Assembly (NCBI RefSeq): GCF_032191835.1
Contig: NC_083229.1
Coordinates: 39,308,001 to 39,372,000 of the forward strand
Direction of reading: 5' to 3'
Source: Heteronotia binoei
Lineage: Eukaryota
Length of the DNA stretch: 64,000 nt
The position numbers and the translations under genes are program-made. Position 1 is the stretch's first letter. Each line of letters opens with the position of its first letter. The notes under the pieces are model-generated. The model was not told the origin of the DNA, made no database searches, and saw only the letters and a program-made list of their open reading frames with translations. Below are positions 25,401 to 57,241 of this stretch, one piece after another.

Positions 25401-28400
25401 TAGTCAACTTCAATTTTTTTTGTCCACCCAACAGGGGCTTCTAATTGCTGTCACATGGATTCTATTTCTCTAAAGCTACTTGTGGGGAGCCTGCCTGCGG
25501 GTAAGGCAAGATAAAAATCAAATCAAACAAACAAAGAGAGCCATGTGTGGTTTGAAGGCCAGGCCATTTGTACATCCCTTCTTGCCAAGGTACAACATTT
25601 ATAAACATTCACAGCACCTGAAGCAGGCAGTGGTTTGCCATGGCTCGATAGCAGGCCCGATAGCATTTGGTTGTGGGCTTGTCTCCTAAGCAGTAGCCCC
25701 ATTTCTTCACCATGTGAAATCGTTTTGCATGCCAGATGTGTGTTTCCAGCCAGATGTTCTTCTTCTGTCTGCGATTGAACTCGGCCACCAGGTTTATATG
25801 ACGTCGCCTGGCTTTACGACATTTGCTCTTTGGGAGTTCTTTTTTCTGATGTTCAGGTTTCTCCGCCTGCATAGTTGGGACATGGAGTAACTTTTTAATG
25901 CTGTTACAAGGACAGGAAACCAGGTTTAGCTCCTCTAATACAGCATAATCAAAGATCACATTGAGATACAGGGATCTCCCTGAAAATTTTCAGTTCTGGG
26001 GACAAAGTCGTCTGTAAACAGCCTATACTCCGAAGCAGAGCAAGGTGTTTCTTTACAGTGACAGACAAGGCAACACAACTCAAAGATAAGCAAAAGTATT
26101 TATTGAGCTAGCAGGCAGTTTCAGAATAGAATGGTGAAAATAAAAAAACAACATTATAAAATATAACTAATACACTTACATCACATCATAATCACCAGCC
26201 GGTAAACAGGACGGCTCTTTGCCAAGAAAACAGTAGTAAAAAAGCGGTTTTGGGAAACAGTATAAATCCCCCTAAGCTGGCTAATGACAAACCAAAAATG
26301 GACATCCCAGAAGAAACAATCAACCAACTGACTTTCCTAGTGCAGCTGAGAGTGGCCATTAATTAGGAGGAGATTAGAACAACTCCTTCCAAGGTCACAC
26401 ATAACCAAAACACTGCTGAAAGAATAATAGTTAGCAAGCAGCCCAGAAATCAAAACCACCATGTGTATGTGTGTATGTATGTGTATATATATATATATAT
26501 ATATAAAAATTAGATTTTTAAAATCCACAATACCCTTAAAGCAAACTGGGAAAACCCTGTCGTAGTTAGCTGCTCATGAGGTGCTAATGCCCAGATTTGT
26601 AACAATTCCTTCTGTATAACTTGTTTGCCAGATCACTGCTCAACCTGCCCTAACACAGATTTGGAAGTGAGCTGATAATGTTTTTTGTACTTTCCTTTAA
26701 GGTCAAGATCAAACATATTTCACAGATAAAGGTAGGCTTAAGATGTCTGATATAACATCTAGGGGTGTGCATTTGGATCTACCCAAACCAAAAACATACC
26801 CCAAAAATACTTATCATATTATTAGCTTATTTTGGTATCCCAAAGATATCCGGGTTCTTTTGGGAAAACAACAGCAACAAAAAATTCCTGAAAAAAATCC
26901 TGGGTATATTTGGGGTAGAACTGAAAAACAGCTGAGATGAGGAGCACATTGTTTTTGCCTCCCAGCTGTTTGTTGAGCTTTTTGCAGTCCCTGGAGAACA
27001 GTTTGGTGTAGTGGTTAAGTGTGTGGACTCTTATCTGGGAGAACCGGATTTGAATCCTCACTCCTCTACCTGCGCCTGCTGGAATGGCCTTGGGTTAGTC
27101 ATAGCTATCGCAGGAGTTGTCCTTTGCTGCTACTTTAAAAAAACTCCCCCCCTTCTTTGGTCTATTGCACATGAACTGAAAAATACCAGTTAAAAAAAGT
27201 TGCACACCCCTAATAACATCCACTTCAGAATTAAGCTGATCTAGGCATCACAAAATACCTCTATAGAGGCTGCCTAGAGATCCCATGTTAACTAAGAAGT
27301 TCCCTGGCCTCCTCTGGAAGTGCTAGACTCCGTATCTGAAAACAATTTCCCACTTTTTCCCTACAAACTTATGTTGCATTGTACCTCATGTTTCTAGTGC
27401 CTCCAAATAACCTCAGCCAACAACCCAATTCTGATCTACCTCTCAGTCCGTAAGCAGCAAACCATCAACTAGCTCCTTCACTATCACTCTAAAAGGTAAA
27501 GGTAGTCCCCTGTGCAAGTACCAGTCATTTTCGACTCTGGGGTGATGTTGCTTTCACAACGCTTCATGGCAGACTTTTTAATGGGGTGGTTTGCCATTCA
27601 CTCTACATGACTGTATTATTTAAGAGGAAAGGAAAAACACACACACCAGCAGGTTAACAAGAAAGCAGTTCCACAGATATGGATCTTCTAATGAAAAAGC
27701 CTTCATAATTTACCTGTCAATTGTTCAGCTGATATTAACAGCCATGAAAGTATACAGCACAAAAGCAACCTGCCAAGTAGATATAGGCTGTATAGAACTG
27801 CACTTCTTTAGCTACTGGAAGCCAATGCAGTTCAAAGAGCATATGGAAGGAGGGTGGGGATCCAGCCCAAATATCTAGAGGAGAAGAGCAATCATAAGTC
27901 ACCACCTTCCAGAATAAGGGAAAAAGTCCCACGGTGGGCCTGCCACATCCTGTGATGTGACCAGGGGTGGTATTCTAGATTAGGCCACATACCCCTGATG
28001 TAGCCAGTCCTCCAAGAGCTTACAAGGCTCTTTTTTGTAAGCTCTTGGAGGACTGGCTACATCAGGGGTTTGTGGCTTAATATGCAAAGGAGCTCCTGCT
28101 AGAATTCCACCCTGGACGTGACCATATGGTCATCTGCAATTTCAGTCCTGCATATGCTTTCTACAAATTAATTCAGAAATGATAAACAGAGTATACAGAA
28201 GCATCCTCTCCCCCATAACCCACAAGACCAAAAAAGCACCTCTGCTCTGGCAAGTTCACGGAGCCGCCTGGGCAGGCGCTTGACATTGTGGCTCATTGCC
28301 CGCCTTCTCATGTGTCTTGGCAGAGACTGAAACACTAAAGTATTGGAAGACTTCTGCGTAACCGCCTTCAGCATGGCCTTTATTTCAGCCGCACGAGCTC

Positions 28401-31400
28401 GAACAAAAGGAGAAACTGAAATTAAGAGCATAAACTTCAGAACAATCAAGATGACATATTCATTCAATTCATTTATTGCCCACTTTTCTCACTGAGATTC
28501 AGGGTGTATTACAGAATTAGAAAACAATGTAACAGAGAACAGTATAATATTAATAAAGAATACAATATTATAAATATCTGCTTAAAATTGTCACTGACTA
28601 CAATCCTACATGATGGAATTCTCATCTGAAGAACATTACTTCATAAAAAAGTACATTCAACCAAATTCAAATATCTTACATTAAGTGGTAAAGACTTCGT
28701 TTGCAGTTTTTAATAGTTCTATTTTTGCTACCTGCCTTGGGTTCCACTTGCTGACAGAAGACATCACAATACAAACTGCAATGCTTAGCCTAAATTTTTA
28801 TTCTCCACTGTGAAAATAAAGTCTATCACAGCACATGAAGAAGATTAAGGTATGAATATAAGCAGTCATGACAATTCTAACGAGTTATGGTGTCTTTTTC
28901 ATTCTTCTCCTGCTTTTTTTTTGCCTACCAGGTAAGTACAGGCTTGTTAACAGCCCCCTGCATTATTGCCTAAGGCAAGAAGAAAACTGTTGCCAGAAAA
29001 CCAGGCAGGGAAGCATTACAGGAACTCCTTTCTTTTAACAGGCCTGAGATCAGCTGCACAGCTTGTTTAGGCAGGCTAATACAAGTTGTCTGTATCCTGG
29101 CATATCAGGTGGGACTCATTTTATCAGAACCAGCCTAACAGTTATTTACATGCATGGTATATTTTCACCCTGCCCTTCTCTAAGGAGCACAGGGCTCCCC
29201 AGACAAGGATCTCTCCAGTCCTCCATTTTATCTTCACAACAACCTGGGGAAGCAGGTTAGGCTGAGAGAAAAAGTGACTGGCCCAAGGCCACCCAGTGAG
29301 TTTCATGGTAAGGAGGATCTGGGTCTCCTAACCCCTTCTCTACCCACTACAACAGACTAACTCATTTTCTCTCAGTAGTCACAATTTTGTCATAAATTCT
29401 AGGCAATCTCTGGCTAAGGAAAACAAAGCAATGAATTCCAGCCTTGCTTTCTGCCTGTAGGAACACACTCTGGAGGGAGGATTTCCACTGACTGCCCCCC
29501 CCCCCCCGTCTTCCTCATTTAACACTCCATGCTGTTCCTGGGGGGCCCTGAACTCAGAAGAAGAGACGATGAGATACAGCTGAAGAAGGCTGAAAAGCTC
29601 ATTTCAGCAAACTGAGGTTTGGATCCAACTCAACATATATTAGTCTATGACCAGCAGAGGAACATAAAACTCCACTGATCTGTTAAATGTTTCTATCACA
29701 ATTAATTATATTCTCTTTAAATCCCTCAGCATGAGGACCAGTTTATATTTTTAACCTGCTATAGATCAAGATATACAGAGACTTTACACATCACCAGTTT
29801 TCCAAAACTGCATTATTACATAGGAAACATCATAGTGTATTCGCCCCTATAACAGGGTTTATAGCTTAACATTTAAGTACATGGGTCTTAAAGCAAGGAT
29901 GAATATTCCTTCATGGATATTTACCTGTTAAATATTTAGGCACTCCATGGGATGTGCTTTGATGAGAGAATCCTCGTGAGGTTTCAGAACATAATTCTAT
30001 AAAGTCAAAAGAATTTTTTAATTAGAAATGAAACTAAAATGGTGTTCTGAGATAGCAAGCTATGTGCATACCACAAAATATATTAGTAATCCAAATGATG
30101 ACAGATTCACTTGCCATTGATTAGGTACATAAGAAGTTCAAACCCAATTGGATCTGAACAGCATTTAAACCACAATGCATTTACACAGCACTGTTATGAA
30201 GACACTACAGAAGAGATTCATATGGCATTGCATTTACAAACTTACTACAGTCAACCAACCAAGCAACAAACAAACCTAATGTTAAACCACAGTCCATATT
30301 TAAATCCAAGGGATATAATCCAATAAATATTTACCTGGTTTAATAACTCAATGACCCTCGGCTGTCTGACCCAAGCTAGCCCATCTCGGAAGCTAAATGA
30401 GATCAGCCATGGGTAGCATTAGGATGGGATTGTACCAAGGAAGTCCAGGGTTGTTATGCAGAGGCAGGCAATGGGAAATCGCCTCTTGCCTTGAAAACCC
30501 TATAAGGGCTGCCATAAGTCTGCTGTGACTTGATGGCACTTTCCAGCAATAACTCAGTGACATTCACTCCAAGTACTGCTACTGACATCTATGCAAAACC
30601 CTGGAAACTGCTGCAACAATAAGCCCCACTTGAATAGACCTAAGTAGGATTCTAAGTAGACTTGCTCAAAATCACTCTCAAAATCTAACACACTGCCATA
30701 CAGATCAAAAGTGTTGTCAGTGTGTTAGCAGCAGAAACCTCAAACCTATGAGAATCCATAATCAGTACCAATTTCTGCTCACTATTTACTATTAATGTAA
30801 GCTGCTCAATGAAAAATAAGAACGTGCGACTGAACAACAAGCTGCTCAAAGCACATTTGTTCAGTTTTTGTTGTTCAGTAGCACAGTCAAGTCCATCTCA
30901 TGGACCAAGTCATGCCAGGCCCTCCTGTCTTCCACAATCCTCCAAAATTCGCTCAAATTCATGTTAGTTACATCAATAACGCTGTCCAGCCATCTCATCT
31001 TTTGCCATCCCCTTCTTTTGCCTTCTGTCTTTTCCAGCATCAAGATCTTCTCCAGTGAGTGCTCCCTTCTCATTGGGTGGTCAAAGTATTTGAGCTTCAG
31101 CTTCCGGCCTTCCAGGGAACAGTCAGGGTTGATTTCCCTTAGGACTGACCAATTTGATTTTCTTCTAGTCCAAGGGACTTGCAAGAGTTCTTCTCCAGCA
31201 ACACAATTTGAAAGCCTCTATTCTTCTGCACTCACAAGGACCAAAACGTGATGGTTGTTTTAATTTACCCTACAGATCCCTGCTTTTTGTTGCATCATCA
31301 CACAACTGTGGCATGAGGCTGTGCAGTTGACACAAAGAAAAAATTATGCTTCCTTGTTCTTTCTGGTCCATGTAGGGCATGCTCAGAAGCAGCAGCTCAA

Positions 31401-31805
31401 TGGTGGAGAGGCCTGCAGAGCAACCTCCCATTTCTCCAAGCCCCAATGCCAAAGCCTTGCCTCTGAGTTCTGCATCTGCCAAGCAGCACCCCATAAGAGA
31501 CAGAGACCTAGTTCTGGTCTACTACATATAGGACTTCATAGCTCAGTCACTTTACCAGTCACCCTAATGATTAAATGTGGCATTATTGTTTTATAAAAAA
31601 CTAAAACAGAAAAACTCCAAAGCTACATGAACATTACAACCAGTAAATTATAATGATGACCTTGTTTCTTGCGTTGGTGAGCTCCTTCACCTCCATTCTG
31701 ACGCCATATTTCACGGGGACTAGGGCCACCATCAGATGGAAAGATCACACTGGCAGGCTGATTTTTCATTTTCTTGGCCCTCTTCTTTTCTTTTGCTTTT
31801 GACAT
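9831..31805 (-). CDS. POP1: POP1 (RNase P/MRP subunit), full spliced CDS: 15 coding exons, 2943 nt, 980 aa
   Basis: Exon lengths 145+72+176+249+88+188+248+94+112+117+116+192+155+342+649 = 2943 nt with consistent phases and GT-AG junctions. Contains hallmark motifs [51 protein letters not shown] and C-terminal [21 protein letters not shown]. Confidence 0.97.
12156..12497 (-). CDS. POP1: POP1 exon 15 (342 nt)
   Basis: ttttgtcatag| [25 protein letters not shown]...CAFCVL |gtaagt. Confidence 0.95.
12600..12800 (-). mobile_element. 5S rRNA-derived SINE
   Basis: Reverse complement of the same family (gcttagcttccaggatctgac; gatttatggcgac...gtttttcaag). Confidence 0.65.
13099..13253 (-). CDS. POP1: POP1 exon 14 (155 nt)
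   Basis: ccttgtag| [13 protein letters not shown]...NDYPDCPAS...LLEKFK |gtaaat. Confidence 0.96.
14455..14950 (-). mobile_element. Possible solo LTR in POP1 intron 13
   Basis: CCAAT 14811-14815, TATATAAA 14777-14770 and AATAAA 14482-14477 in LTR order on the minus strand; ends not resolved. Confidence 0.35.
15136..15327 (-). CDS. POP1: POP1 exon 13 (192 nt)
   Basis: tctcag| [14 protein letters not shown]...[22 protein letters not shown] |gtaagt. Confidence 0.97.
15364..15589. other. Assembly gap (226 N) in POP1 intron 12
   Basis: Run of N. Confidence 1.
15987..16102 (-). CDS. POP1: POP1 exon 12 (116 nt)
   Basis: ttttcttag| [39 protein letters not shown] |gtaact. Confidence 0.95.
18135..18729. 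mobile_element. hAT-type non-autonomous element
   Basis: TIRs caagggtttcaaac / gtttgacacccctg; perfect 8-bp TSD atctaaag. Confidence 0.9.
20000..20116 (-). CDS. POP1: POP1 exon 11 (117 nt)
   Basis: tttttaag| [39 protein letters not shown] |gtaaag. Confidence 0.95.
21007..21118 (-). CDS. POP1: POP1 exon 10 (112 nt)
   Basis: tctttctag| [37 protein letters not shown] |gtaaat. Confidence 0.95.
21181..21482 (-). mobile_element. Sauria-type (Squam1) SINE, full length
   Basis: tRNA-derived head (gtggcgcagagtggtaaag...cctgagttcgatccc) and Bov-B-like tail 'cacaggggactacctttacc'. Confidence 0.9.
22093..22368 (-). mobile_element. Squam3-like tRNA SINE
   Basis: Reverse complement of the same family. 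Confidence 0.8.
22956..23049 (-). CDS. POP1: POP1 exon 9 (94 nt)
   Basis: tttcttccag| [32 protein letters not shown] |gtaaga; preceded by a 116-nt intron. Confidence 0.96.
23166..23413 (-). CDS. POP1: POP1 exon 8 (248 nt)
   Basis: cacttag| [10 protein letters not shown]...[26 protein letters not shown] |gtattt. Confidence 0.95.
24134..24321 (-). CDS. POP1: POP1 exon 7 (188 nt)
   Basis: tttccttag| [16 protein letters not shown]...[13 protein letters not shown] |gtacaa. Confidence 0.96.
24423..24510 (-). CDS. POP1: POP1 exon 6 (88 nt)
   Basis: tttctttcag| [29 protein letters not shown] |gtaat. Confidence 0.96.
25618..25866 (-). CDS. POP1: POP1 exon 5 (249 nt)
   Basis: gcag| [10 protein letters not shown]...[20 protein letters not shown]...NHCLLQ |gtgctg. 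Confidence 0.97.
26462..26503. repeat. (GT/AT)n-(TA)n microsatellite
   Basis: tgtgtatgtgtgtatgtatgtgtatatatatatatatatata. Confidence 0.9.
27492..27605 (-). mobile_element. Sauria-type SINE, 5'-truncated
   Basis: Tail 'aaaggtaaaggtagtcccctgtgcaag' in antisense. Confidence 0.85.
27640..27900 (-). mobile_element. L2 LINE fragment
   Basis: [13 protein letters not shown] resembles the L2 LHWLP motif. Confidence 0.55.
27962..28114. mobile_element. Palindromic hAT-type MITE
   Basis: Palindrome; TSD gatgtgac/gacgtgac. Confidence 0.85.
28240..28415 (-). CDS. POP1: POP1 exon 4 (176 nt)
   Basis: ttcag| [16 protein letters not shown]...RLRELARAE |gtgctt. Confidence 0.96.
29925..29996 (-). CDS. POP1: POP1 exon 3 (72 nt)
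   Basis: ttttgactttatag| (E)[23 protein letters not shown] |gtaaat; the end matches human ...TSQEIPKYIT; phase 1-1. Confidence 0.88.
30350..30545 (+). mobile_element. 5S rRNA-derived SINE
   Basis: 5S-like head 'catctcggaagctaa..gatcagcc..ggtagcattaggatggga' plus body 'gcagaggcaggcaatggg...cttgaaaaccct...gtgacttgatggcact'. Confidence 0.7.
30861..31200 (-). mobile_element. RTE/Bov-B LINE 3' fragment
   Basis: Translation VPWT.R.SN.SVL.EINP.CSLEG..LKLKYF.H.MRRE.SLEK..ML...RW LDSV..EDRRAW is typical of the Bov-B ORF C-terminus. Confidence 0.9.
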
Positions 31806-32147
31806 TTCTGCAATAAAATGAAAAGTTTATTCTCAGGCAACCAACAGCCACTGGCTCCAACAGACTTATTGTTATTTAGTAGGATGTTGTAAGGAAGTTA
31901 TGCCTTCAAAGGTTTAAATAACTACTACATTTGGAACCCATTCCAGGAACATCCAAGGAGCTGAGGGCAGCCTACACGGCTACCCCTTCCTCATTTTATT
32001 CCCTCCCCTGACCATCTTCATAAAATGTCTGGCTGACAGCAATTGGCTCAGAACAGCCTCATGCCACAGTTGTGTGATGATGCAACAAAAAGCAGGGATC
32101 TGTAGGGTAAATTAAAACAATGTCTGGCTGACAGCAATTGGCTCAGA
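31255..32147. repeat. Perfect 68-bp inverted repeat pair (31255-31322 / 32053-32120) plus 29-bp direct repeat (32024-32052 / 32119-32147)
   Basis: Base-by-base comparison: 68/68 reverse-complement identity. Confidence 0.95.
31661..31805 (-). CDS. POP1: POP1 first coding exon (exon 2; exon starts at 31807, cag|aaATG)
   Basis: [17 protein letters not shown]...KKQ matches the vertebrate POP1 N-terminus. Phase-1 donor G|GTCATC is weak. Confidence 0.9.
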
Positions 32148-32944
32148 GCCTTACAACTAACTGGGAATTGGAGTTGGGGTGGGGGGAACTCTGACAAAAA
32201 TTAATAAGATGTATACAAAAAGGACAATTTACCATCATATTATAACTCCACAACCATTGCACTTTTTAATTAATATAGCCAGTGCTTTTTTTCTTGGAAA
32301 AGTGGTGTCGGAACTCTCAAGAGGGAAATGGAGAAACACAAGGGTGCCTCTCACGAACTTGTAAACATTTTTTGAGAATGTTCTTTCCACAGAGGTTCCA
32401 GAATGCTGTTCTTTCCACAAAGAGGTTCCAGAACGCTGTTTCCCCCAGGAAAAAAGCCCCTAAATATAGTACTTGGCAACTTTCCCCTGCATTTTTTCGC
32501 TGCAGAATCTCAAATACACTCACACTGCAGAGAGTGAGTCAGCACCTACTTCCTACCTTGGCTGCAGCTCATCTCCCCTGCAGCATCAGCAGATACGGTT
32601 CAAAGCCTCAGCTGCCTCTCAGGGGCTCAAGAATTAGCCCATTACAACTCAAAAGCAGGGAAACAAACAAAGGCAAAATTTTGGATTTCCCCAAGTCATT
32701 TAGCCAGTAGCATCTCTCACTCTGTATATCTACATGCCCATACACACATGCAACTTTCCTTTTATTAAATATTTTTAAATAAGACAAGAAACGTCTCCAT
32801 TAATGTCTGATTTAACATATGGATCTTGTGAGATTTGCTAATGTACGTTCCAATTTCTCCCACCACAAAAATTTAAACAGCAGTAAGCGTCTTCTAGTTA
32901 CAGAATTAAAAGCCACAGGACATCAACACTAGACATTAAGGAAA

Positions 32945-33113
32945 AGGAAAGGTCCCCTGTGCAAGCACCAGTCGTTTCCGACTCTGGGGTGACGTTGCTT
33001 TCACCTGAAAGCACCTGAAAACCCAGCTTCCACACCCGGGGATCGAACTCAGGTCGCGAGCAGCGCTTAGGACTGCAGTACTGCAGCTTTAACATTATGC
33101 GCCACGGGGCTCT
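32945..33113 (-). mobile_element. Sauria-type SINE with internal deletion
   Basis: Head and tail present, central body missing. Confidence 0.85.
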
Positions 33114-33687
33114 TAAACTGGACATTAAACCTTCGAGGAAGCATTTTCGCTAAACATTCAAGGGCACGTGATACTCTGTGCAAATCAAACGAGGGGGGCA
33201 CTCTATATGCTTGCAGAGTTACTCTTATTGCAATGAACACCCCCCCCCCCTTCATCACAAAACTCAGGACTATTCACAAAGGGCTCTCTCTGACAAGAGT
33301 GAGATTGCTTGGCTTCGGAAAGTTGCAGCGTCATGTGTTTCACCTGGCCCACTTCGACACACAAATCACGCAGAAGTCTGAGACATTTAGATGAGGGTGG
33401 CGGCAGCAAATACAGAATCTCTTCCTACAGTCAATCAAAAGCCTCGTGAGGGCCCAGCCTGCTTGTTGCTTGGGTCTGCCAGTTTGGGGAGGGGCAGGAT
33501 CTCAACAGGGGTCATCATAACACCATAGAGGCCACCCTCCAAAGCAGCCATTTTTGCCAGGGCAACTGAACCCCATACTCTGTGGATCAGATGTAAATAC
33601 CGATCTATCCAGCAATCCATCCATCCCACTATACCCCACTCTAGCCTTAGTTTAAGCAAAGCTTTGTGCAGCGGCACCCGAGCCTAC

Positions 33688-33830
33688 CCGCAGCCTCCTG
33701 AGCGCAAAGCTCCCGACCCTACCAAGTCAAGCCTCAGGCACACACCAGCTCCGCGCCTTCCCTCCGCAAGGCTCCTTCCACAAACCAACCACGTTGCAGT
33801 CACTTCCGGCAAGAGCTGCTACGCATGCGC
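33688..33830 (-). other. POP1: Predicted non-coding first exon of POP1 (boundaries uncertain)
   Basis: Exon 2 has an acceptor 2 nt before the ATG, so an upstream exon is needed. Candidate donors are CGG|GTAGGC at 33688 and TTG|GTAGGG at 33723, inside the CpG island. Confidence 0.4.
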
Positions 33831-34155
33831 ACTCTTTCCCCATGGCGTCGGGCGCCTCTGGTCCCTTGCAGAGAGCCACCCCAAACTACATGTCCCATAA
33901 TCCTTAGCCAGAAGGGACGGTTGCAGGGAAGGGGGAAGAGACCTTCGAAAAAAGGAGCGGGGAAGCGACGGCCGGGTTCTTCGTCTGAATGGCGCTGGGG
34001 CGGGGCGTGATTGGCCGGGGAGAGGCGGGGCTGGAGCAATGCCGGGGGAGCTGCTGCGAGTGTTCCTTCGCACGGGGTGCAAAGTTCAGAGAAGCACAAA
34101 AGCGGCTCAGTCTCCGCTGCACCCGCAACGAAGAGGAGCTGGTGTTGCTGTGGGG

Positions 34156-34220
34156 ATGGCCACGTTAGTCAAGAAGATCATCCATACTGCTAAGGCTCCG
34201 GCGGCTGTGGGGCCCTATAG
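34156..34220 (+). CDS. RIDA: RIDA exon 1 coding part
   Basis: [21 protein letters not shown](S) |gtatta. Confidence 0.95.
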
Positions 34221-37200
34221 GTATTATTGTTGTTCTTTGCTTACTTTGAATATCTGTTCCCCATTGGCGGCCCAAAAGGGCTTATAATCATTTTATCCTC
34301 ACAACAGCCCTGTAGGGTAGGTTAGTATGACCGGCGTAAGGTCGCCCAGCGATCTTTCATGACAGACGATCCTAACTCTCGCGGATCCTAGTCCGACACT
34401 CTGACCGCTGTGCGTTGTGGTATGAGAAAGTATTGTTTTGAAGCAAAATGGGAGCGGGGTGTACAGTGGGATTGGTTATCATAGGTGAAAATGGCGCTGG
34501 CGCAAAGTTTCTTAGAGTCTGTAATGATCTGTTTTGCTTTCTGTTTGTATGGAGTATCCTCCAAGGAGTTCAGATTGGTGTACGTGTCTTTTCTCCAACA
34601 CACTTTATTCTCACAACAGCCTTGTGAGGTAGGATGGTCTGAGAGAGTAAGGGTTATTCTGTGGTTATTCTTCATGGTTATTGTGAGTCTCATGGCTTGG
34701 AGGGGATTTGAATCCCAGGCGTGAGCACCAGCTGTCTGAGCAGCTGTAGATGCAAGAGTTTATTGCTGCTGTGTGTGTCTTATCAGATTTTTATTTTGCC
34801 ATTACTTAAAGGTGTTCAGGGAGTAGTACACCTTTGTAATTTCCTCTGTTTTATCCTCAGAAAAATCTTACAAAGTGGGCTAGGCTGAGGGAGGGAATCG
34901 ATTGTGCCTGTAAGGACATCTGAACCCATGTCTTCCTAGTCCAGTACCCTAAACATTACACTAGCCTTCACTAGGTTATAATTTTGGATGGGGGGGGGGG
35001 GGTTGTTATGGACCCTGACCAGGAGCTCCATAAGTTCTCAGAACTTCCAAAGAAACAATAGGATACAGGAGGTGGTGGCGGCTACAAGCATAGCCAGCTT
35101 CAAGAGGGGGTTAGATAAAAATATGGAGCAGAGGTCCATCAGTGGCTATTAGCCACAGTGTGTATATATGTGTGTGTGTGTGTGTATATATATATAAAAA
35201 AAATTTTGGCCACTGTGTGACGCAGAGTGGTGGACTGAATGGGCCATTGACCTGATCCAACATGGCTTCTCTTATGTTCTTATCTGGATTTACTTAAAAG
35301 GAGATCTTTAATAAAAGCATCAGTTACAGAAAATGCAAGCTTCCATCAGCTGGGCTTTGAGCCTGCTCAGCGAAACTTAGCTGGACCCATAGGCGTAAAC
35401 TATGGGGGAAGGGCTCAAGCTCCCTCTCCCTGGATTTTCCGGGCAACCAACACAGGACTTGGGGGTTCAGGCCTCCCCCAGGCAACCAGTGCCAGGCGTA
35501 GTGGCAAACTCTTTTGAGTGTATGAAAATGTTTCCCAATTTAAATTTTCAAGAAGGAGAGATAATGATCTTAAAAGGCATGAATGGGGTGGATGCATTTT
35601 TCTCCTGGGACATTCTGAGGCAGGAAAACTCCCCACTGTGTGTGATTTTCCTCCTGGGCTGGAAAGAAAGAAGTCAGTAGTGTAATGATGTTACAACCTC
35701 CGCTTCTTAGAAATGCTAATTGAACTAGCACAGACAATGAACAGATAGATGGATGGAGAAACTTATTGTGAAGGTATCTGTTGGGATTTGGCAACTTCAC
35801 TTTCTGAAGTCATGACACAATTACGGTATTTTTCGGACCATAAGACGCACTTCCCCCCCCCCCCCCAAAAAAAGTGGGGGGGAAAGTGTGTGCGTCTTAT
35901 GGTCCGAAGGTACTACCTTCTTCAGGCAAGCGCTGGGATTGCTCCACATGGCCCCACCACAAACCCAGCGCTTCGCAAGCGCCGGCTGCGGAGGGGGCAG
36001 CATGCTTCCTCTTTGCCTGTGTGCCTGGCTTCATCTGTGATGCTTAAAGCAAGCGCTGGGATCGCTCCCTCCGATCCCAGCGCTTGCTTTAAGCATCACA
36101 GATGAAGCCAGGCACACAGGCAAAGAGGAAGCACCCGCCCCCTCCGCAAACCCAGCGCTTCGCGAGCGCCGGCTGTGGAGAGGGCAGCGTGCTTCCTCCT
36201 TGTCTGTCTGCCTGGCTCCACCACTGATGTTTAAAGCAAGCGCTGGGATCGGAGGGTGGAGAGAGCGATCCCAGCGCTTGCTTTAAGCATCAGAGGTGGA
36301 GCCAGGCAGACAGACAAGGAGGAAGCACGCTGCCCCCTCGGCAGCCAGCGCTTGCAAAGCGCTGGGTTTGCGGTGGGGCCACGTGGAGCAATCCCAGCGC
36401 TTGCCTGAAAAAGATGGAGCCAGGCAGGCAGGCGCGGGGGAAGCGCCGGATCGGAGGCAGAGGCAGCGGATTGCCCCCCAGGAGGAAGGTGCATCCTATG
36501 GTCCGGAGCGCCTTATGGACCGGTATATGTTTGTTTATGCATGCTGATGTCTTAGCTTTGCTAGTTAGAGCCAATTGGCTACTCTGCATGTATCTCCTGC
36601 CAGAGGCTAGGTGTCAATATGCATATTAACCAGTGTTGGTAAGCTCTAATTGGGTAATCAATACATTGGCAGACCTGAGTCAAGGGGGTGGGGAAAGAGA
36701 TTTGGTAGCCTTCCTGGCAATAAGATGCTCTTGCAACACATCTGTCAGGAGATACAGATCTCTCAACTGAGATCTAGAAAAGGTGGCTATTTTTTCATCC
36801 ATCCAGCTGATCTAGAGTGTTGCAGGACACTTGATATTGTAAGGTAATTGTGAACTGCAAAAGTTTTCAGTTGTATTTTTGGACTTTCCAGATAAATAAC
36901 TAAAGTTTTGATATCCAGCACATATCAATCTTTATACATTTAGTGTCTGTTGGAAAAGAAAGTATAGCCCTTAACCCTGGCTGGCTACACCCACTTTTAA
37001 TGTAGCAACAGTCTTTGGTGGATTCAACATACTTGTTTGGTTCCAATTTACATTTAGGGGGAAAGTAAGATTGAGTGTGTGGGGGGACATGAAGATCAGA
37101 GGCCTTTAAAAATTTCCTAATGGATTCATGTGGGGTAGCCATGTTGGTCTGAACAGCAGAACAAAGTTTGAATCCAGTGGCATCTTTAAGAACCAACCAA

Positions 37201-40200
37201 ATTTTATTCTGGGCATCAGCTTTTGTGTGCATGTACACCGTTTCATTTAGATTACACACATGCTGAGTTTATTTTGTGGGTAGAGCAGGGTATAAGTTGA
37301 ATAAATGAAATGAAAGTTTGATTTCTGAGTATAAGTGAAAACTTGAGTGATTTAGGTATCAAAAGATTCTCTGAAATCCTGATAAACTGTAGCATATGCT
37401 GAACCCAGCATGTAGTAACTCGAGTATGCTGTTGCCTTCTCATCTCAATTTATACCCCATCATACCCCCAAAATGGGCTCAGGATGGCTTACATCAATTT
37501 ATACCCCATCATACCCCCAAATTGGGCTCAGGGTGGCTTACATCATAAAACCAACAAGATAAAAGTAAAACAATGATTAGGATCAATGATTAATAGCAAC
37601 CCCCCCCCCCATGCCTCATGTCAGATCAATATTTGTGTGTATGTGTAACCCCAGAAACTCTGAAAAATACCAAAAGGTAGGAAGGCACCACTATGGACAC
37701 CACTTTGTTGGTGTTAAAGGTGTCACTGGACTCAAACTCAGTTCTCTCATCTGTTAACTGCTTTATTATTTGTATACCAATTTACTGTGATTTACACATT
37801 TTACCCAATGTGTTATTCCAATCTTAGCTGGATTTATTGCTCAGATACTTATTCCTCCCCCTTGCCTATAAGTAATACTTGAGGAAATCTGTTTCAGTGA
37901 ATCTTAAGGAGTGGCCATACTAAGCTTCTCAGTTCTCACCTGTACCCATAATGGAATATTATTTGACTTGTAGGTGCCACTGAACTCAAACCTCATTCCC
38001 ATATCTGTTAACTCTTGATTTGCATGGTAATTATATGTCATTCACAGCTGTAATCACCCAGTATTTATGCATCTTGGCTTTCTTGACAGCCACCCAACCC
38101 CTGTAAGTAAGGGTTGAGGAAACTGCTTTCAGTGTATCTGACGAAGTGTGCTTGCACAGGATAGCTTATACCCAGAATAAAACTTTGTTGATGTTAAAGG
38201 TGTCACAGGACTCAAACTTTGTTAATGATTGGAGAAGAAATTGGGGGGAAGAGTAGCACTGTATTGCTATGTTGCATAAATATTACTATAGGATTTGGGG
38301 GTTCTTTTGGTAGATAGAAAGCCCCGTGGCAGAGTGATAAAGCTGCAGTACTGCAGTCAGCCCTCTGCTCACGACCTGAGTTCAATCCTAACGGAAGCTG
38401 GTTCAGGTAGCCGGCTCAAGGTTGACTCAGCCTTCCATCCTTCCGAGCTTGGTAAAATGAGTACCCAGCTTGCTGGGGAGAAAGTGTAGATGACTGGGGA
38501 AGGCAATGGCAAACCACTCCATAAAAAGTCTGCTGTGAAAGCAACGTCACCCCAGAGTCGAAAATGACTGGTGCTTGCACAGGGGACTACCTTTACCTTT
38601 TTTTTGGTAGATAAATATTTTATGCCTTCTTCAAGCAACTATTGGGCTGGGGAGGTGGGATATGGCAGGAGAGGATGCTTGTGGGAGCAGAAGTGGAAAC
38701 AGGGGTTTAGGAGAATATTTGATTGTACCGTAATTTCTAAAAGTAATTTCTAAAGAAAACAGTTTGCATTGTTAATTAAAAGTTAAAGTTGTATTTCAGC
38801 TGTCTGAAGATGATTTGTTGAAGCCAAATGCATTTTGCAAGTTGAACCTAAAGAGCAGAAATTTACCGTGCACAGGAATGCAGTCATTTCCCATCAATTG
38901 AATCATGTGATTTGCATTAATGATTTGCTCTGAATATCTGTGTTTTTAAGGTGGCATTTCTAAGCAATGTTATAAGAGGGCAAGGTATATAAAATCGTAG
39001 CTGGTATAAGTGTCAGTTTTCTTTGGGGTCATGATCATGGGCACTGTTCTGAATTGCCTCAAAATATACTTGTACTCACTTGTAAGATATGAGTTTGAAG
39101 TGAGAAGAACATTGCCACTACTCTGAACTTTGTACATTGCTCAGAATTTGATCGCTCAGAAACTGTTTTGTATTCTGCCCTGGGTCAGAGACCCATGAAT
39201 TTATCAAACAAAGGTATCTGTAATACCATAGTTTTGTAAATTTCAGTACAATGGTACTGAATTAATGAGGCAGAAACAAGACACCTGTAAGTGAACGTCC
39301 AGGGAAACTTATAAAATGTTCCCCTAAAGCTTTTCTGTATTGCCTTTTACTGTCAAATTTGTGACCATTCGTTTGTCCTATGCACGATATGTATATTTGC
39401 AGATCTTAAAGTGGCTATTTTTAAAAGTGAATTTCAAAAACAGGACACAGCAGGAGATACCACTATAACCACAGGCCAGCTCCCACTTTTTCCTGGGTTT
39501 GGCCTGGCCTATGGGCATTGTTGGGGGGGGGGCTGCTCTCTAGATTTATGGGGAGGGAGCTTCTCCATAAATCAATAGGTAGTGATAATGGAGGCTCCTC
39601 CCTATGATGTCACTGGATCCAATGCCTCTGGCCGAGCCCCGCCCCCCCCCCCCCCCCCGGGAAATTGAAAAGTCTATGCCCTTGACTGGATCTGGAGGCC
39701 ACAGACATGACCTATACATCTTATACCCTAAGTGCTGGCTACAACAAGTCAAAGAACTATTAATTAAGCTATCCCAAACACTTGGATGAGCCAAGCTGAT
39801 TTGCACCCGGCTTGCAGTCAGGGAAGAAACATCCCTGGCTTTGAAAATAAACTCTGCTAACAAGCATGAGAGAGAGTTCTCTTGGGAGCTGCCTATCACC
39901 ATTCTCACATATCAAAGATGGACTCAGCCAGATCACACAGGGTATTGTGGGGAGTTGAGAGGAACAAATCCAGTCTTATTACTCAAAATTCCCTCATCTA
40001 AGATCTTAGAAGTTTGAATAAGTTGTTTCCCTACTTTCTTTAAGTGACTTGCAGTTGCTCTTAATATGAATTTCTCTTGGGATTATTTGCATTTCTTCTT
40101 GGGGGCTGGTTTTCAAAACCACATTTTTATTTTTGTTGATTTATGAAGTCTTATTGTTTTCTTCCATACTGGGCAACTTTTCCAAATATGTCGAGACCCT

Positions 40201-43200
40201 ACCCTATAAATGACCTATTTTTGCAGCCACAAGGACCAGCCAGTTTACTCTTGGGTATAGCAATTATCTTCCATTTTTTCTGTTTGACAGACTAATCCTT
40301 GAATAGCTCAACTGCCAGAAATGCATGGTTAATTAGTAATTTTTAGGGGTTACAGTTCCTGTTAGTCTGCTTGGTAGTTGAATGTAGATTTTTTTTCTTT
40401 GAACAAAGAAAGACTCATGCAAAGAATGAAAAAGAAGAGTTGGTTTTTATATCCCACTTTTCTCTACCTTAAAGAGTCTCAAAGCAGCTTACAATCACTT
40501 TCCCTTCCTCTCCCACAACAGGCACCTTGTGAGGGCTGAGAGAGTTCTGAGACAGCTATGACTGACTCAAGGTCCCCCTGCAGGTTTTGTATGGAGGAGT
40601 GCAGAATCGAACCTGGTTCTCCAGGTTAGAGTCCACCACTCTTAACCACTACACCATGCTGGGTAGTGTATGTAACAGTATTAACTAGTTCTGACAAAGT
40701 TATTAGTAAACTGGAGGACTTTTGTGTTAAAAGGGTTTCAGTTGTGAGCCCTGCATGAAGGTATGAAGATATGATTCTTTTATTAATGTGATATCTTCAC
40801 AGATTTCAAGAGATAGTTTGTGTGAGGCCCAATCATGTTACTGTACATGCTCATGGGGGGGGGGGGGGCCTACCTGAATATCTCTAAGCTTCTTTTGTAT
40901 GGAAAAATAAATTTCTATTCAAGGTTTTCTGATCACAGCTCTTGAATCAGGCTCCTGGAAAAAAACCCTGCTAATTTAACAGATTATTGGGAAGGACCAT
41001 TTTGGGAACTTTTGCTATACATTTTAGGTTTCTTTACTTTGAAGTATGTCCTGCTTTATAGTGTTTCAGTTGTAGTTTACTATTTTATTTATGGGGTTTC
41101 TATCCCGCCAAAGCAGGCTCAAGGCAAGTTACAATAGAATATAATGCCATATATAATAAAAAACATTAAAATAAAAAATCCTCAGTATAAAATAGTATGT
41201 GGCTTGGAGCTCATTCTGAATGTTGGAAATGAACATATGATATCCAGGGTGAACTATAACAAGATCCGGGTGGGTTGCCATGTTGGCCTGAAGCAACAGA
41301 ACCAAGTTTGAGTCCGGTGGCACCTTGAAGACCAACCAAGTTTAATTCTGGGAATAAGCTTTGTGTGCATGAATGTATCACCAGATACACTGAAACAGTT
41401 TTCCTCAAGCCTTTCATACACACGGGGGGGCCCCTATTTATAGTTTAGGCTATATATAAATCAGGTATTGAAATTAGCGAGATACAAGATGTCTGTTCAC
41501 ATATATACACCTAATGTTTGTATCTGAAAAAGTCCTGCAATTTTGACTGTTCTTAAAATGGTGTTCCCTTTAGCACCCAAGTTGTAAAAATTACCTGATG
41601 GATAGCTTTTTTCACAAAACATTGTAGCTGGGGTGATGTTCCTGTTCATTTTGTAAGTCATTATTGATGCTTGGGGAATGAGGAAGATGCTCAGGGATGG
41701 GGAATGAGGAAGATGCTCAGGAATGAATGGTTTCGTTCCTCTTCTGTTAAACTATAATGATTTAAATATGTCTTTCCCACCTACTTCCAAGGAAGCTGTT
41801 GATCTTCTGAACCAGTGCTTGGAATCAGTAGTGGGCTTAGATGAGAAAGAACAAATAGAAACTTAATTCTGACAAGACAGAGGTGCTTTGGGTTAGTAGA
41901 AAGGCAGAGCTGGGATTTCAGATCTGTCTGGTATTGTATGTGGTTATCCTTCCCTTGAAAAATCAAGTATACAGCCTGGGAACTTGGCACAGCAGTTATG
42001 TCAGGAAACCAGGTGGCAGCAATGGCTCGGAGTGTTGTTGCCCAGCTTTGGCAGGTGCGTCGACTGCATCCATTCCTAGGACTGGGCTAGCTATTGGGAG
42101 CATGTGACCCTGAGATTCCAGCAGTTACACTACAGATTCACTCCTGAGTCCAATTCAAGGTGTTGGTTTTGACCTTGAAAGCCCAGGGGGGTGCATCTGG
42201 CCGTCTCATTTTCAATCTTTAGGAGGCTGTCAAATATGGTTTCCTTTAGGTCTGCATTTAGTTGATTTTACTGAGTTGTGATTTTAAAATTTTGTTTTTA
42301 TATTTTAATGTATTTTAGTCTGTGTTGTAAGCTGCCTTGAACTCTGTAGCTCTTGCCACTTAGTAGTTCATAACTCTAAAAGAGTTAGGATTTCTGGCTG
42401 CCAGACAATCTTAGGATCTCCAGGCTATACTACGCACAGTCATATTGTTGTTACAAATGTCTACTTCCTGCCCCCCCTTCCCCATTAGCAGTTAAGAGAC
42501 TTGTTTATTGCCTAAGTGAGCTATGATCCTTTTGTGAATGTGCACTAGCAATTTTCTCTTTAGATAAAATTCACTTTTAAATGTTTATGCACAGTTTGTA
42601 TTTTGTACTGTGATTTCTACCGTGTACTGCTTGATTTTCTGTATATGTTAGATATATTATGGCATGTTTCTTATTAAGTGGTTTGGAGAAAGTGCTGAAA
42701 CTGCTAATCTTGAGCTGATTAACTGCACCTTGTTTACCTGTTTTTGACACTGCAAGCTTGGAGCTTTTTGTTTATGGCCAAATTACACATTACATGCCAT
42801 TATCTTCTCTTGCCTTAAAAAAAAAAATCACTGTCTTGAATGGAGCACGAGTGGGGAGGAGCTGCTTAACCATTTCCCCTGTCCTCCTCATGGGATTGCT
42901 GAATCAATGTATTGTTACCTCTCGAGGCTGGAAATGATGCCCACTCATATACTTGGGGATAGAATTTTTTACAAAGTCAAGCCATTTCAAAAGGCAAATG
43001 CTGGACATGAGCTAGGCAGTGCTCAATGGTAAATCTCTTTCTCTCTCTCGGTACTCTACTATTGCATCTTAGTCAAGCCGTGTTGATAGACCGGACCATG
43101 TATATAGCAGGACAGATTGGCTTGGATCCTTCAAGTGGGCAACTTGTACCTGGAGGAGTAAAGGAACAAACTAAACAGGTAAAAATGTGACTTCAGTTAT

Positions 43201-57085: not shown

Positions 57086-57241
57086 NNNNNNNNNNNNNNN
57101 NNNNNNNNNNNNNNNNNNNNNNNNNNNNNNNNNNNNNNNNNNNNNNNNNNNNNNNNNNNNNNNNNNNNNNNNNNNNNNNNNNNNNNNNNNNNNNNNNNNN
57201 NNNNNNNNNNNNNNNNNNNNNNNNNNNNNNNNNNNNNNNNN
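57086..57241. other. Assembly gap (156 N)
   Basis: Run of N. Confidence 1.

What the first reader, a model, noticed from the sequence alone, without database searches (positions are those of the whole stretch)
31255..32147. Template-switch insertion creates a perfect 68-bp inverted repeat that brackets the POP1 start-codon exon
Seen: 32053-32120 (intron 1) is an exact 68/68 reverse complement of unique sequence at 31255-31322 (intron 2). It sits between two copies of a 29-bp direct repeat (32024-32052, 32119-32147), with 2-nt AA microhomology at the return junction. Known: this is the signature of fork-stalling/template-switching or polymerase-theta templated insertion, and intronic inverted repeats flanking an exon promote skipping or back-splicing. 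Inference: in the pre-mRNA a 68-bp duplex would loop out ~730 nt containing exon 2 (31661-31807), which has the ATG and a weak GTCATC donor. The result could be a 147-nt circRNA or an exon-2-skipped mRNA whose next in-frame ATG is Met87. The perfect identity suggests a very recent, possibly polymorphic event in an essential gene.
Basis: partly seen in the sequence, partly recalled or inferred. Interest (0 to 1): 0.72.

Follow-up and report, generated by a model that had tools for sequence, protein, structure and literature searches.

The report
Inverted templated insertion flanking POP1 exon 2
A 95-base insertion in the first intron of a gecko's POP1 gene, a backwards copy of 68 bases from 730 bases away plus a 29-base repeat of the target site, is a clean example of a known kind of repair or replication error, and no evidence here shows that it disturbs splicing.

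Summary
Window 32053-32120 is a 68/68 reverse complement of 31255-31322. It sits between two perfect 29-bp direct repeats that overlap it by AA. Neither repeat has another copy in the window, and none is expected by chance.

RNA contigs from two public runs confirm the gene model: exon 2 at 31661-31807 holds the ATG and uses the weak AAG|GTCATC donor. The arms lie in intron 1 and intron 2.

The anatomy fits one mutational event: an inverted templated insertion with a target-site duplication. I favour repair of a staggered break, of the Pol-theta "inverted TINS" plus small tandem duplication type. The return point lies behind the departure point, a class that Löytynoja and Goldman did not see among replicative short template switches.

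- The source is not plain unique DNA. It probably lies in a decayed RTE/BovB-like LINE fragment.
- Perfect identity only bounds the age at about 8-32 My.
- No DNA reads were available, so assembly error and zygosity remain untested.
- The RNA contigs show only linear exon 1-2-3-4 joins, with no skipping and no back-splice. The circRNA and skipping idea is therefore plausible but unsupported.

The scan noted a similar event elsewhere in this genome (402 bp inverted, 11-bp duplication). This is a known kind of mutation, of modest interest.

The parts
31255..31322 (.). Source (template) arm, in POP1 intron 2, 338-406 nt downstream of the exon 2 donor in the transcript
   Evidence: 68/68 reverse-complement match to 32053-32120. 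It has no flanking duplication, so it is the ancestral copy. It probably lies in the frame-shifted continuation of the LINE fragment at 30864-31217 (my reading translations, a lead only).
32053..32120 (.). Inserted inverted copy, in POP1 intron 1, 245-313 nt upstream of the exon 2 acceptor in the transcript
   Evidence: It is flanked by the 29-bp direct repeat. The left junction has 0 nt of microhomology and the right junction has 2 nt (AA).
32024..32052 (.). Direct repeat copy 1 (target-site duplication)
   Evidence: 29/29 identity to 32119-32147; only two copies in the window.
32119..32147 (.). Direct repeat copy 2; its first two bases (AA) are shared with the end of the inverted copy
31661..31807 (-). 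POP1 exon 2 (147 nt) with the ATG at 31805-31803 and the weak donor AAG|GTCATC (5 of 9 matches to CAG|GTAAGT)
   Evidence: RNA contig joins 33688>31807 and 31661>29996 in runs X1 and X2; splice contexts and translation.
31808..33687 (-). POP1 intron 1 (1880 nt, GT..AG); holds the insertion
   Evidence: Join that skips 1880 nt with ends CT..AC on the + strand, in X1 and X2.
29997..31660 (-). POP1 intron 2 (1664 nt, GT..AG); holds the source arm and the LINE fragment
   Evidence: Join that skips 1664 nt with ends CT..AC, in X1 and X2.
33688..33772 (-). 3' part of POP1 exon 1 (5' UTR; no ATG in the 85 nt seen)
   Evidence: X1 contig record 7; ATG scan.
29925..29996 (-). POP1 exon 3 (72 nt), with two out-of-frame ATGs that open 2- and 6-codon ORFs
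28239..28415 (-). POP1 exon 4, start of the POP1_N domain; holds Met87
30864..31217 (-). Decayed RTE/BovB-like LINE fragment (C-terminal ORF2-like stretch), highly repeated in RNA contigs
   Evidence: 118-aa stop-free stretch. Thousands of 90-99% contigs lie on 30750-31149. The best feature hit in the ESM Atlas is 'Endonuclease-reverse transcriptase family protein', score 0.91 (weak). There is no Pfam hit.

Best explanation
This is a real germline mutation made in one event: a 95-bp insertion into POP1 intron 1. It consists of a 66-68-nt reverse-complement copy of sequence 730 bp away in intron 2, followed by a 27-29-bp re-copy of the target site.

The most likely route is error-prone repair of a break with staggered, overlapping 3' ends about 29 nt long. 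One 3' end was extended on a nearby template in inverted orientation, either by snap-back on its own resected strand or on the sister chromatid. This is the Pol-theta "inverted templated insertion" type. That end was then joined to the other end, through 2 nt (AA) of microhomology at one junction and none at the other, so both overhangs were kept as a tandem duplication.

The by-product is a perfect 68-bp inverted repeat in the two introns that flank the start-codon exon. In the pre-mRNA the arms should pair and loop out 730 nt that include exon 2. This could allow some back-splicing or skipping, but normal linear splicing is what the data show, and I expect any effect to be minor.

Shown: the repeat anatomy, the gene model and linear splicing. 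Inferred: the repair pathway, the RNA duplex in vivo and the small effect.
For: - **Repeat anatomy:** exact 68/68 inverted and 29/29 direct repeats with a 2-nt overlap, unique in the window, 0 expected by chance. It is the only perfect pair among 19 inverted pairs.
- **Polarity:** only the 32053-32120 copy is flanked by a duplication, so it is the derived copy.
- **Order of switch points:** 3-2-4-1, with the return behind the departure. Löytynoja and Goldman report that types in which 4 precedes 1 were not observed and would need re-opening of the new duplex (PMC5453318).
- **Breaks with protruding ends:** these give tandem duplications. The Pol-theta-made ones carry microhomology and sometimes in-cis templated inserts (PMC5730883).
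- **Inverted templated insertions:** a recognised POLQ-associated scar (PMC13269935). Snap-back synthesis by Pol theta is documented (PMC4912351).
- **Simple small tandem duplications in the same window:** 49 bp x2 at 37445-37542 and 26 bp x2 at 41672-41723.
- **Gene and splicing:** Pfam identifies POP1. RNA contigs give exon 1-2-3-4 joins with GT..AG ends.
- **RNA pairing:** the duplex is present in the MFE and centroid folds, z = -8.4, duplex energy -127.5 kcal/mol.
Against: - No DNA reads or second assembly could be examined, so the two novel junctions are supported by the assembly alone.
- The insert is long and distant for typical Pol-theta templated inserts. Kent et al. report a median of 7 bp in vitro, and the MUSIC screen maps templates to the break flanks.
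- One junction has no microhomology.
- TINS are defined there as deletions with insertions, whereas here nothing was lost.
- The pathway cannot be read from one scar.
Confidence: 0.62

Rival explanations
1. Replicative template switching (FoSTeS/MMBIR, or a long-range version of the four-point template switch). A nascent strand left its template at 32052 and copied 68 nt from the opposite strand at 31322 down to 31255. It then returned through AA microhomology 27-29 nt behind its departure point and re-replicated the 29-mer.
For: Two switches explain every base of the insertion. The return junction has 2 nt of microhomology. The four-point model only requires that fragment 2->3 be copied in reverse complement (PMC5453318).
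Against: Types in which point 4 precedes point 1 were not observed in the human-chimp comparison and would require opening the newly made duplex. The first switch has no microhomology. A 730-bp distance is beyond the short-range events that the model was applied to.
Confidence: 0.2
2. Assembly or library artefact. The 95-bp block comes from a chimeric molecule or a consensus error and is not in the animal's genome.
For: No independent DNA evidence was obtainable. Strand-displacing polymerases are known, from my own knowledge, to produce inverted chimeras. Several perfect inverted repeats were noted elsewhere in this assembly, which could reflect a systematic artefact as easily as a real process.
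Against: The block is clean at both junctions, with a precise target duplication. That is a biological repair signature, not a typical chimera, which joins two long segments. A consensus built from many reads should remove single-molecule chimeras. Simple small tandem duplications of the same class, slightly diverged at 96% and therefore old and real, occur in the window.
Confidence: 0.12
3. RNA-templated insertion. A staggered nick pair, for example from a LINE endonuclease, was repaired by reverse transcription of the nascent POP1 intron 2 RNA. Priming was on its A-rich stretch, and the result is a short, 5'-truncated cDNA flanked by a 29-bp target-site duplication.
For: The insert on the + strand has the sense of the POP1 pre-mRNA. 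Its 3' end is A-rich (7 of its last 9 bases are A) and abuts the second repeat, with AA shared. LINE ORF2p makes staggered nicks with 3' overhangs and target-site duplications, and such ends yield diverse alterations, templated insertions among them (PMC11702581).
Against: There is no poly-A tail, and the insert is not the 3' end of any element. The inferred bottom-strand nick context (CATT/TTAT) is not L1-like. 29 bp is longer than the 12-18-bp L1 duplications reported. A DNA template 730 bp away is the simpler source.
Confidence: 0.05
4. The new duplex substantially diverts POP1 pre-mRNA into a 147-nt exon 2 circle or an exon-2-skipped mRNA translated from Met87.
For: Inverted repeats of 30-40 nt in flanking introns are sufficient for circularisation in minigenes (PMC4201285). 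The arms lie 245 and 338 nt from the splice sites. The exon 2 donor is the weakest of the three examined, at 5 of 9 consensus matches. The duplex is predicted to form. Met87 is in frame, and the two preceding ATGs open only 2- and 6-codon ORFs.
Against: Both RNA runs give only linear exon 1-2-3-4 contigs, with no exon 1-3 join and no "goes back" join at exon 2. Not all repeats support circularisation, and stronger hairpins sometimes inhibit it. POP1 is an essential RNase P/MRP subunit (my own knowledge), so a strong loss of the start-codon exon should be selected against. Contigs cannot show rare isoforms, and the carriers' genotype is unknown, so this counter-evidence is weak.
Confidence: 0.12

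Closest known systems
Inverted templated insertions (iTINS) of polymerase-theta-mediated end joining (Schimmel et al. 2019; MUSIC screen, PMC13269935)
   Same: The inserted tract is identical to nearby sequence in reverse-complement orientation. There is short microhomology at one junction. Snap-back or sister-chromatid templating explains the orientation.
   Different: Here the insert is 66-68 nt and its template lies 730 bp away, not a few to tens of bases copied from the immediate flanks. Nothing was deleted; instead 27-29 bp of the target was duplicated. One junction has no microhomology. POLQ dependence is untestable here.
Small tandem duplications from double-strand breaks with protruding ends (Schimmel et al. 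2017, PMC5730883; Vaughn and Bennetzen 2014; Schiml et al. 2016, the last two as cited there)
   Same: There is a head-to-tail duplication of a few tens of bases at the repair site. TMEJ-made duplications were reported with microhomology and with occasional in-cis templated inserts.
   Different: The two copies are separated by a long inverted insert, so this is a compound scar and not a simple duplication.
Template-switch mutations, four-point model (Löytynoja and Goldman 2017, PMC5453318; Mönttinen and Löytynoja 2022, PMC8794818)
   Same: One event copies a nearby fragment in reverse complement and creates a perfect inverted repeat, and so an RNA hairpin, de novo.
   Different: The switch-point order is 3-2-4-1, with the return behind the departure. 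That type was not observed in their data. The distance of 730 bp and the length of 68 nt are larger than their short-range events.
Intronic inverted repeats that drive exon circularisation (Liang and Wilusz 2014, PMC4201285)
   Same: Complementary tracts longer than 30-40 nt lie in the two introns flanking an exon with canonical splice sites.
   Different: No back-splice junction was seen. The repeat is a unique de novo pair, not Alu-type elements. The exon is short (147 nt) and carries the start codon.

Membership tests
Template-switch mutation (four-point model) | A fragment (2->3) copied from nearby sequence in reverse-complement orientation explains the change in one event | tested here: met
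   68/68 reverse complement of 31255-31322, and the whole 95-bp insertion is explained by two switches.
Template-switch mutation (four-point model) | The switch-point order is among the observed types, with point 1 before point 4 | tested here: not met
   The order along the + strand is 3 (31255), 2 (31322), 4 (32024-26), 1 (32052). The mirror reading also has 4 before 1. [quoted passage not shown]
Template-switch mutation (four-point model) | Short range, within one replication fork | tested here: inconclusive
   The template is 730 bp away. The authors state that they do not model long-range switches but give no hard limit in the passages read.
Pol-theta templated insertion (TINS / iTINS) | The insert has a match of at least 6 bp to sequence near the junction, inverted for iTINS | tested here: met
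   A 68-nt inverted match; definition from PMC13269935. "Near" here means 730 bp, further than usual.
Pol-theta templated insertion (TINS / iTINS) | The insertion accompanies a deletion (a subclass of delins) | tested here: not met
   No target bases are missing; 27-29 bp are duplicated instead.
Pol-theta templated insertion (TINS / iTINS) | Microhomology at the junctions | tested here: inconclusive
   2 nt (AA) at the right junction and 0 nt at the left junction.
Pol-theta templated insertion (TINS / iTINS) | Dependence on POLQ | not testable with these tools
   This needs genetics.
Small tandem duplication from a staggered double-strand break | Perfect head-to-tail duplication of the sequence between two nicks, at the repair junction | tested here: met
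   29/29 direct repeat immediately flanking the insert. The form matches TMEJ-type duplications with in-cis inserts (PMC5730883).
Inverted-repeat-driven circRNA locus | Complementary repeats of at least 30-40 nt in both flanking introns, able to pair | tested here: met
   A perfect 68-nt pair. It is in the MFE and centroid folds of the 981-nt pre-mRNA piece. Threshold from PMC4201285.
Inverted-repeat-driven circRNA locus | A back-splice junction (exon 2 donor joined to exon 2 acceptor) in RNA | tested here: inconclusive
   No "goes back" join at 31661/31807 in three runs. These are contigs, which drop rare forms, and the genotype of the animals is unknown.
LINE target-primed reverse transcription insertion | The insert ends in the element's or mRNA's 3' end or poly-A and sits at an endonuclease target motif, flanked by a target-site duplication | tested here: not met
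   The duplication is present (29 bp). The insert is an internal fragment about 400 nt from the LINE 3' end and has no poly-A. The nick context CATT/TTAT is not L1-like.
POP1 (RNase P/MRP subunit) gene | POP1_N, POPLD and POP1_C domains in order on one strand | tested here: met
   Pfam: POP1_N E = 3.6e-21 and 2.5e-18, POP1_C E = 2.2e-62, and POPLD weakly (just under its cut-off, on exon pieces).

The most novel reading that the evidence does not exclude
The insertion is a real, possibly segregating allele that acts as a natural minimal experiment. A de novo 68-bp perfect intronic inverted repeat measurably diverts an essential gene's start-codon exon into a circRNA or into skipping, and serves as an ADAR substrate. 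It would also be one of a recurrent class of "inverted local copy plus target duplication" events in this gecko genome (a 402-bp event with an 11-bp duplication was noted elsewhere). That recurrence would point to a lineage-active source of staggered breaks, such as LINE endonuclease nicks repaired by inverted templated synthesis.
Probability: 0.1. Interest if true: 0.55.

Novelty: new member of a known kind. Interest (0 to 1): 0.3.

Why it matters
If real, this is an unusually clean and fully resolvable example of how a single repair or replication error creates a long, perfect RNA hairpin from nothing. It does so across an exon, in a compound form (inverted insert plus target duplication) that the standard short-range template-switch catalogue did not contain. 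It offers a natural test of whether a minimal de novo inverted repeat is enough to change the splicing of a weak-donor exon. Beyond that it is an ordinary neutral intronic mutation. Nothing here shows any consequence for POP1.

Tried and rejected
1. **Public reads.** Laying them confirmed the exons but left both arms and both junctions uncovered: depth was 0 in 31350-31549 and 31950-32149, and no contig fitted two places.
2. **Metagenome contig scan.** A pattern that would catch both the filled and the empty site gave 0 matches.
3. **Exact-product look-ups.** I looked up three ORFs, one over exon 2, one over the insertion and one over the source arm. None is on record.
4. **Transposon with terminal inverted repeats, or a fold-back element.** Rejected. 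The arms are 730 bp apart and enclose a conserved exon. Only one arm is flanked by the duplication. 29 bp is too long for a cut-and-paste target duplication.
5. **Copy from another LINE family member.** Rejected. The local LINE copy is decayed. No other copy is detectable in the window. RNA contigs at 90% likeness or more do not reach the arm.
6. **Microhomology at the left junction.** A nearby AGCCT/AGGCT similarity cannot produce the observed junction. Dropped as coincidence.
7. **Big protein searches.** Not used. Pfam settled the gene, and the length window would not return full-length orthologues from exon pieces.
8. **Spliced models.** Exons were translated one by one, each in its own phase.

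Full report
**1. The observation**

Reading 31100-32300 and the repeat finder confirm every coordinate.
- Window 32053-32120 is the exact reverse complement of 31255-31322: 68 nt, 100%, 730 nt between the arms.
- It is flanked by two perfect 29-bp direct repeats, 32024-32052 and 32119-32147. Bases 32119-32120 (AA) belong both to the end of the inverted copy and to the start of the second repeat.
- Allowing 3 mismatches, the 68-mer and the 29-mer each occur exactly twice in the 64-kb window. None is expected in 100 dinucleotide-preserving shuffles.
- A sensitive blastn finds no diverged copies.
- Of the 19 inverted pairs of at least 30 nt within 5 kb in the window, this is the only perfect one. 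The others are 74-96% complementary and look like transposon structures.
- The net change is a 95-bp insertion after 32052: 66 unambiguous inverted bases, 2 shared bases and 27 re-copied bases.

**2. The gene**

Minus-strand stop-free stretches between 9.8 and 28.5 kb hit Pfam POP1_N (E = 3.6e-21 and 2.5e-18), POPLD (weak, on exon pieces) and POP1_C (E = 2.2e-62).

It found three metatranscriptomic RNA runs from one study. Laid on 28150-34149, contigs from runs X1 and X2 give three joins with GT..AG ends on the minus strand: 33688>31807, 31661>29996 and 29925>28415. This fixes:
- exon 1 (3' part, 33688-33772)
- intron 1 (31808-33687)
- exon 2 (31661-31807)
- intron 2 (29997-31660)
- exon 3 (29925-29996)
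- exon 4 (28239-28415)

Exon 2 matches the window at 147/147 bases in X1 and 146/147 in X2. The one difference, at 31746, is a third-position synonymous change. Exon 4 differs at two bases in both runs. The animals are therefore the same species or a close relative.

Exon 2 starts two bases before the ATG. Its donor, AAG|GTCATC, matches the CAG|GTAAGT consensus at only 5 of 9 positions, against 6 for exon 1 and 8 for exon 3, yet it is the donor used.

By per-exon arithmetic the next in-frame ATG is codon 87, in exon 4. Exon 3 carries two out-of-frame ATGs that open ORFs of only 2 and 6 codons.

**3. What the source is**

The source arm is not ordinary unique DNA.
- Just left of it, 30864-31217 (minus strand) is a 118-aa stop-free stretch. 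From memory, it resembles the C-terminal end of RTE/BovB-type LINE ORF2.
- Thousands of RNA contigs at 90-99% likeness pile on 30750-31149.
- Its best ESM Atlas feature hit is an "Endonuclease-reverse transcriptase family protein" at 0.91, which is weak evidence. Pfam finds nothing.
- Reading on in a shifted frame through 31218-31322 still looks LINE-like to me. This is a lead, not a test.

This does not weaken the local-copy reading. The element is decayed. No second copy is detectable in the window. No contig reached the arms: "fit two places" is 0 for all three runs. A 68/68 match 730 bp away therefore means the local copy was the template. Only the intron 1 copy is flanked by a duplication, so it is the derived one.

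**4. How it arose**

Two template jumps explain every base. In the four-point notation of Löytynoja and Goldman, the order along the + strand is 3 (31255), 2 (31322), 4 (32024-26), 1 (32052). The mirror reading also puts 4 before 1.

Those authors report that exactly the types in which "4 precedes 1" were not observed, and that they would require the return switch to open the newly synthesised duplex (PMC5453318). That argues against a simple intra-fork switch.

The alternative is a double-strand break with overlapping ends, with both ends retained.
- Schimmel et al. showed that breaks with protruding ends give tandem duplications. [quoted passage not shown]
- Inverted templated insertions are a recognised, poorly understood POLQ-associated scar, proposed to arise on broken sister chromatids (PMC13269935).
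- Pol theta performs snap-back synthesis in cis (PMC4912351).

Geometrically, the + strand 3' tail ending at 32052, once resected by 800 nt or more, could fold back and copy 31322 down to 31255. The product would then pair through AA with the other end's tail.

Points that fit this poorly:
- the insert is long and its template is distant;
- the left junction has no microhomology;
- nothing was deleted.

I therefore give staggered-break repair about 0.45 and replicative switching about 0.2, within roughly 0.65-0.7 for "real single templated event". These two sub-figures are a rough split, and the break-repair figure sits below the 0.62 filed for the best explanation as a whole.

A LINE endonuclease could have supplied the staggered nicks, since ORF2p makes sticky ends with 3' overhangs that are prone to rearrangement (PMC11702581). 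RNA-templated synthesis from the nascent intron is also conceivable, because the insert has pre-mRNA sense and an A-rich 3' end. Against both stand three points: there is no poly-A, the nick context is not L1-like, and the duplication is longer than the 12-18 bp typical of L1. I give this about 0.05.

The same window holds two simple small tandem duplications at 96% identity (49 bp x2 and 26 bp x2), so products of this general class exist here.

**5. Real or artefact**

I could not test this. No DNA run was found. A metagenome scan for the filled or empty site found nothing. Three exact-product look-ups found nothing. The precise target duplication and clean junctions look biological rather than chimeric. 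I leave about 0.12 for an artefact.

**6. Age**

Zero differences in 95 paired bases gives a 95% upper bound of about 8, 16 or 32 My for rates of 2, 1 or 0.5 x 10^-9 per site per year. The medians are 1.8-7 My. "Very recent or polymorphic" is possible but is not implied.

**7. Consequence**

As RNA, the arms pair in both the MFE and the centroid fold of a 981-nt piece (z = -8.4). The duplex alone is -127.5 kcal/mol. The arms lie 245-313 nt upstream of the acceptor and 338-406 nt downstream of the donor.

Liang and Wilusz showed that 30-40-nt inverted repeats suffice for circularisation in minigenes. They also showed that not all repeats work and that stronger hairpins sometimes inhibit it (PMC4201285).

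The only RNA data show linear 1-2-3-4 joins, no 1-3 join and no back-splice. They are contigs from animals of unknown genotype, so they neither prove nor exclude a minor isoform. POP1 is essential (my own knowledge) and exon 2 holds its start codon, so I expect at most a small effect.

**8. Comparison, novelty and earlier notes**

This is a new instance of known mutation classes: inverted templated insertion, small tandem duplication and template-switch mutation. It is a compound, unusually long and clean example.

Earlier notes of this scan, which I did not check, call the genome a gecko's. They describe a 402-bp inverted local insertion 1.65 kb from its source with an 11-bp target duplication, which a follow-up judged to be a known kind of mutation. 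They also list other perfect intronic inverted repeats elsewhere in the genome. The scan has therefore seen this kind of event before, on other DNA of the same genome. Recurrence is worth a census, but on its own it does not separate a real process from an assembly habit.

**Verdict**
- The mutational interpretation is largely right, but the pathway is more likely break repair than fork switching.
- The functional and "recent" claims are unsupported.
- Interest is modest.

Noticed in passing
window 30750-31217 (minus strand): Decayed RTE/BovB-like LINE fragment in POP1 intron 2. RNA contigs at 90-99% likeness pile up here (summed depth up to about 30,000), so the family is abundant and transcribed in these animals.
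   Followed up: partly
window 32933-33112: A second very highly repeated element in POP1 intron 1 (summed contig depth above 100,000). Loose ends show (AAGGTA)n-like tails and several "goes back" joins. It is probably a SINE.
   Followed up: no
window 37445-37542 and 41672-41723: Two simple small tandem duplications (49 bp x2 and 26 bp x2, each 96% identical). This is the class expected from repair of breaks with protruding ends, here without an insert.
   Followed up: no
window 28297, 28315 (exon 4) and 31746 (exon 2): Exonic differences between the window and the RNA contigs: T>C at two sites in both runs, and a synonymous C>G in one run. The RNA animals are a different individual, population or close species.
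   Followed up: partly
window 32074-32120 (minus strand, pre-mRNA sense): In the transcript the inserted arm reads as a pyrimidine-rich tract ending in CAG, a possible cryptic 3' splice site about 270 nt upstream of exon 2. No RNA contig uses it.
   Followed up: no
window 15364-15589 and 57086-57241: Two runs of N (226 and 156 bases), the first inside a POP1 intron.
   Followed up: no
window 33700-34200: A G+C-richer stretch (0.48) around POP1 exon 1. It is probably the promoter, and perhaps bidirectional, since the GC skew changes sign at about 34 kb.
   Followed up: no
window 35830-36420: A cluster of nested inverted and direct repeats (arms of 71-156 nt, 85-94% identical) just upstream of POP1. 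It looks like a fold-back or composite repeat.
   Followed up: no
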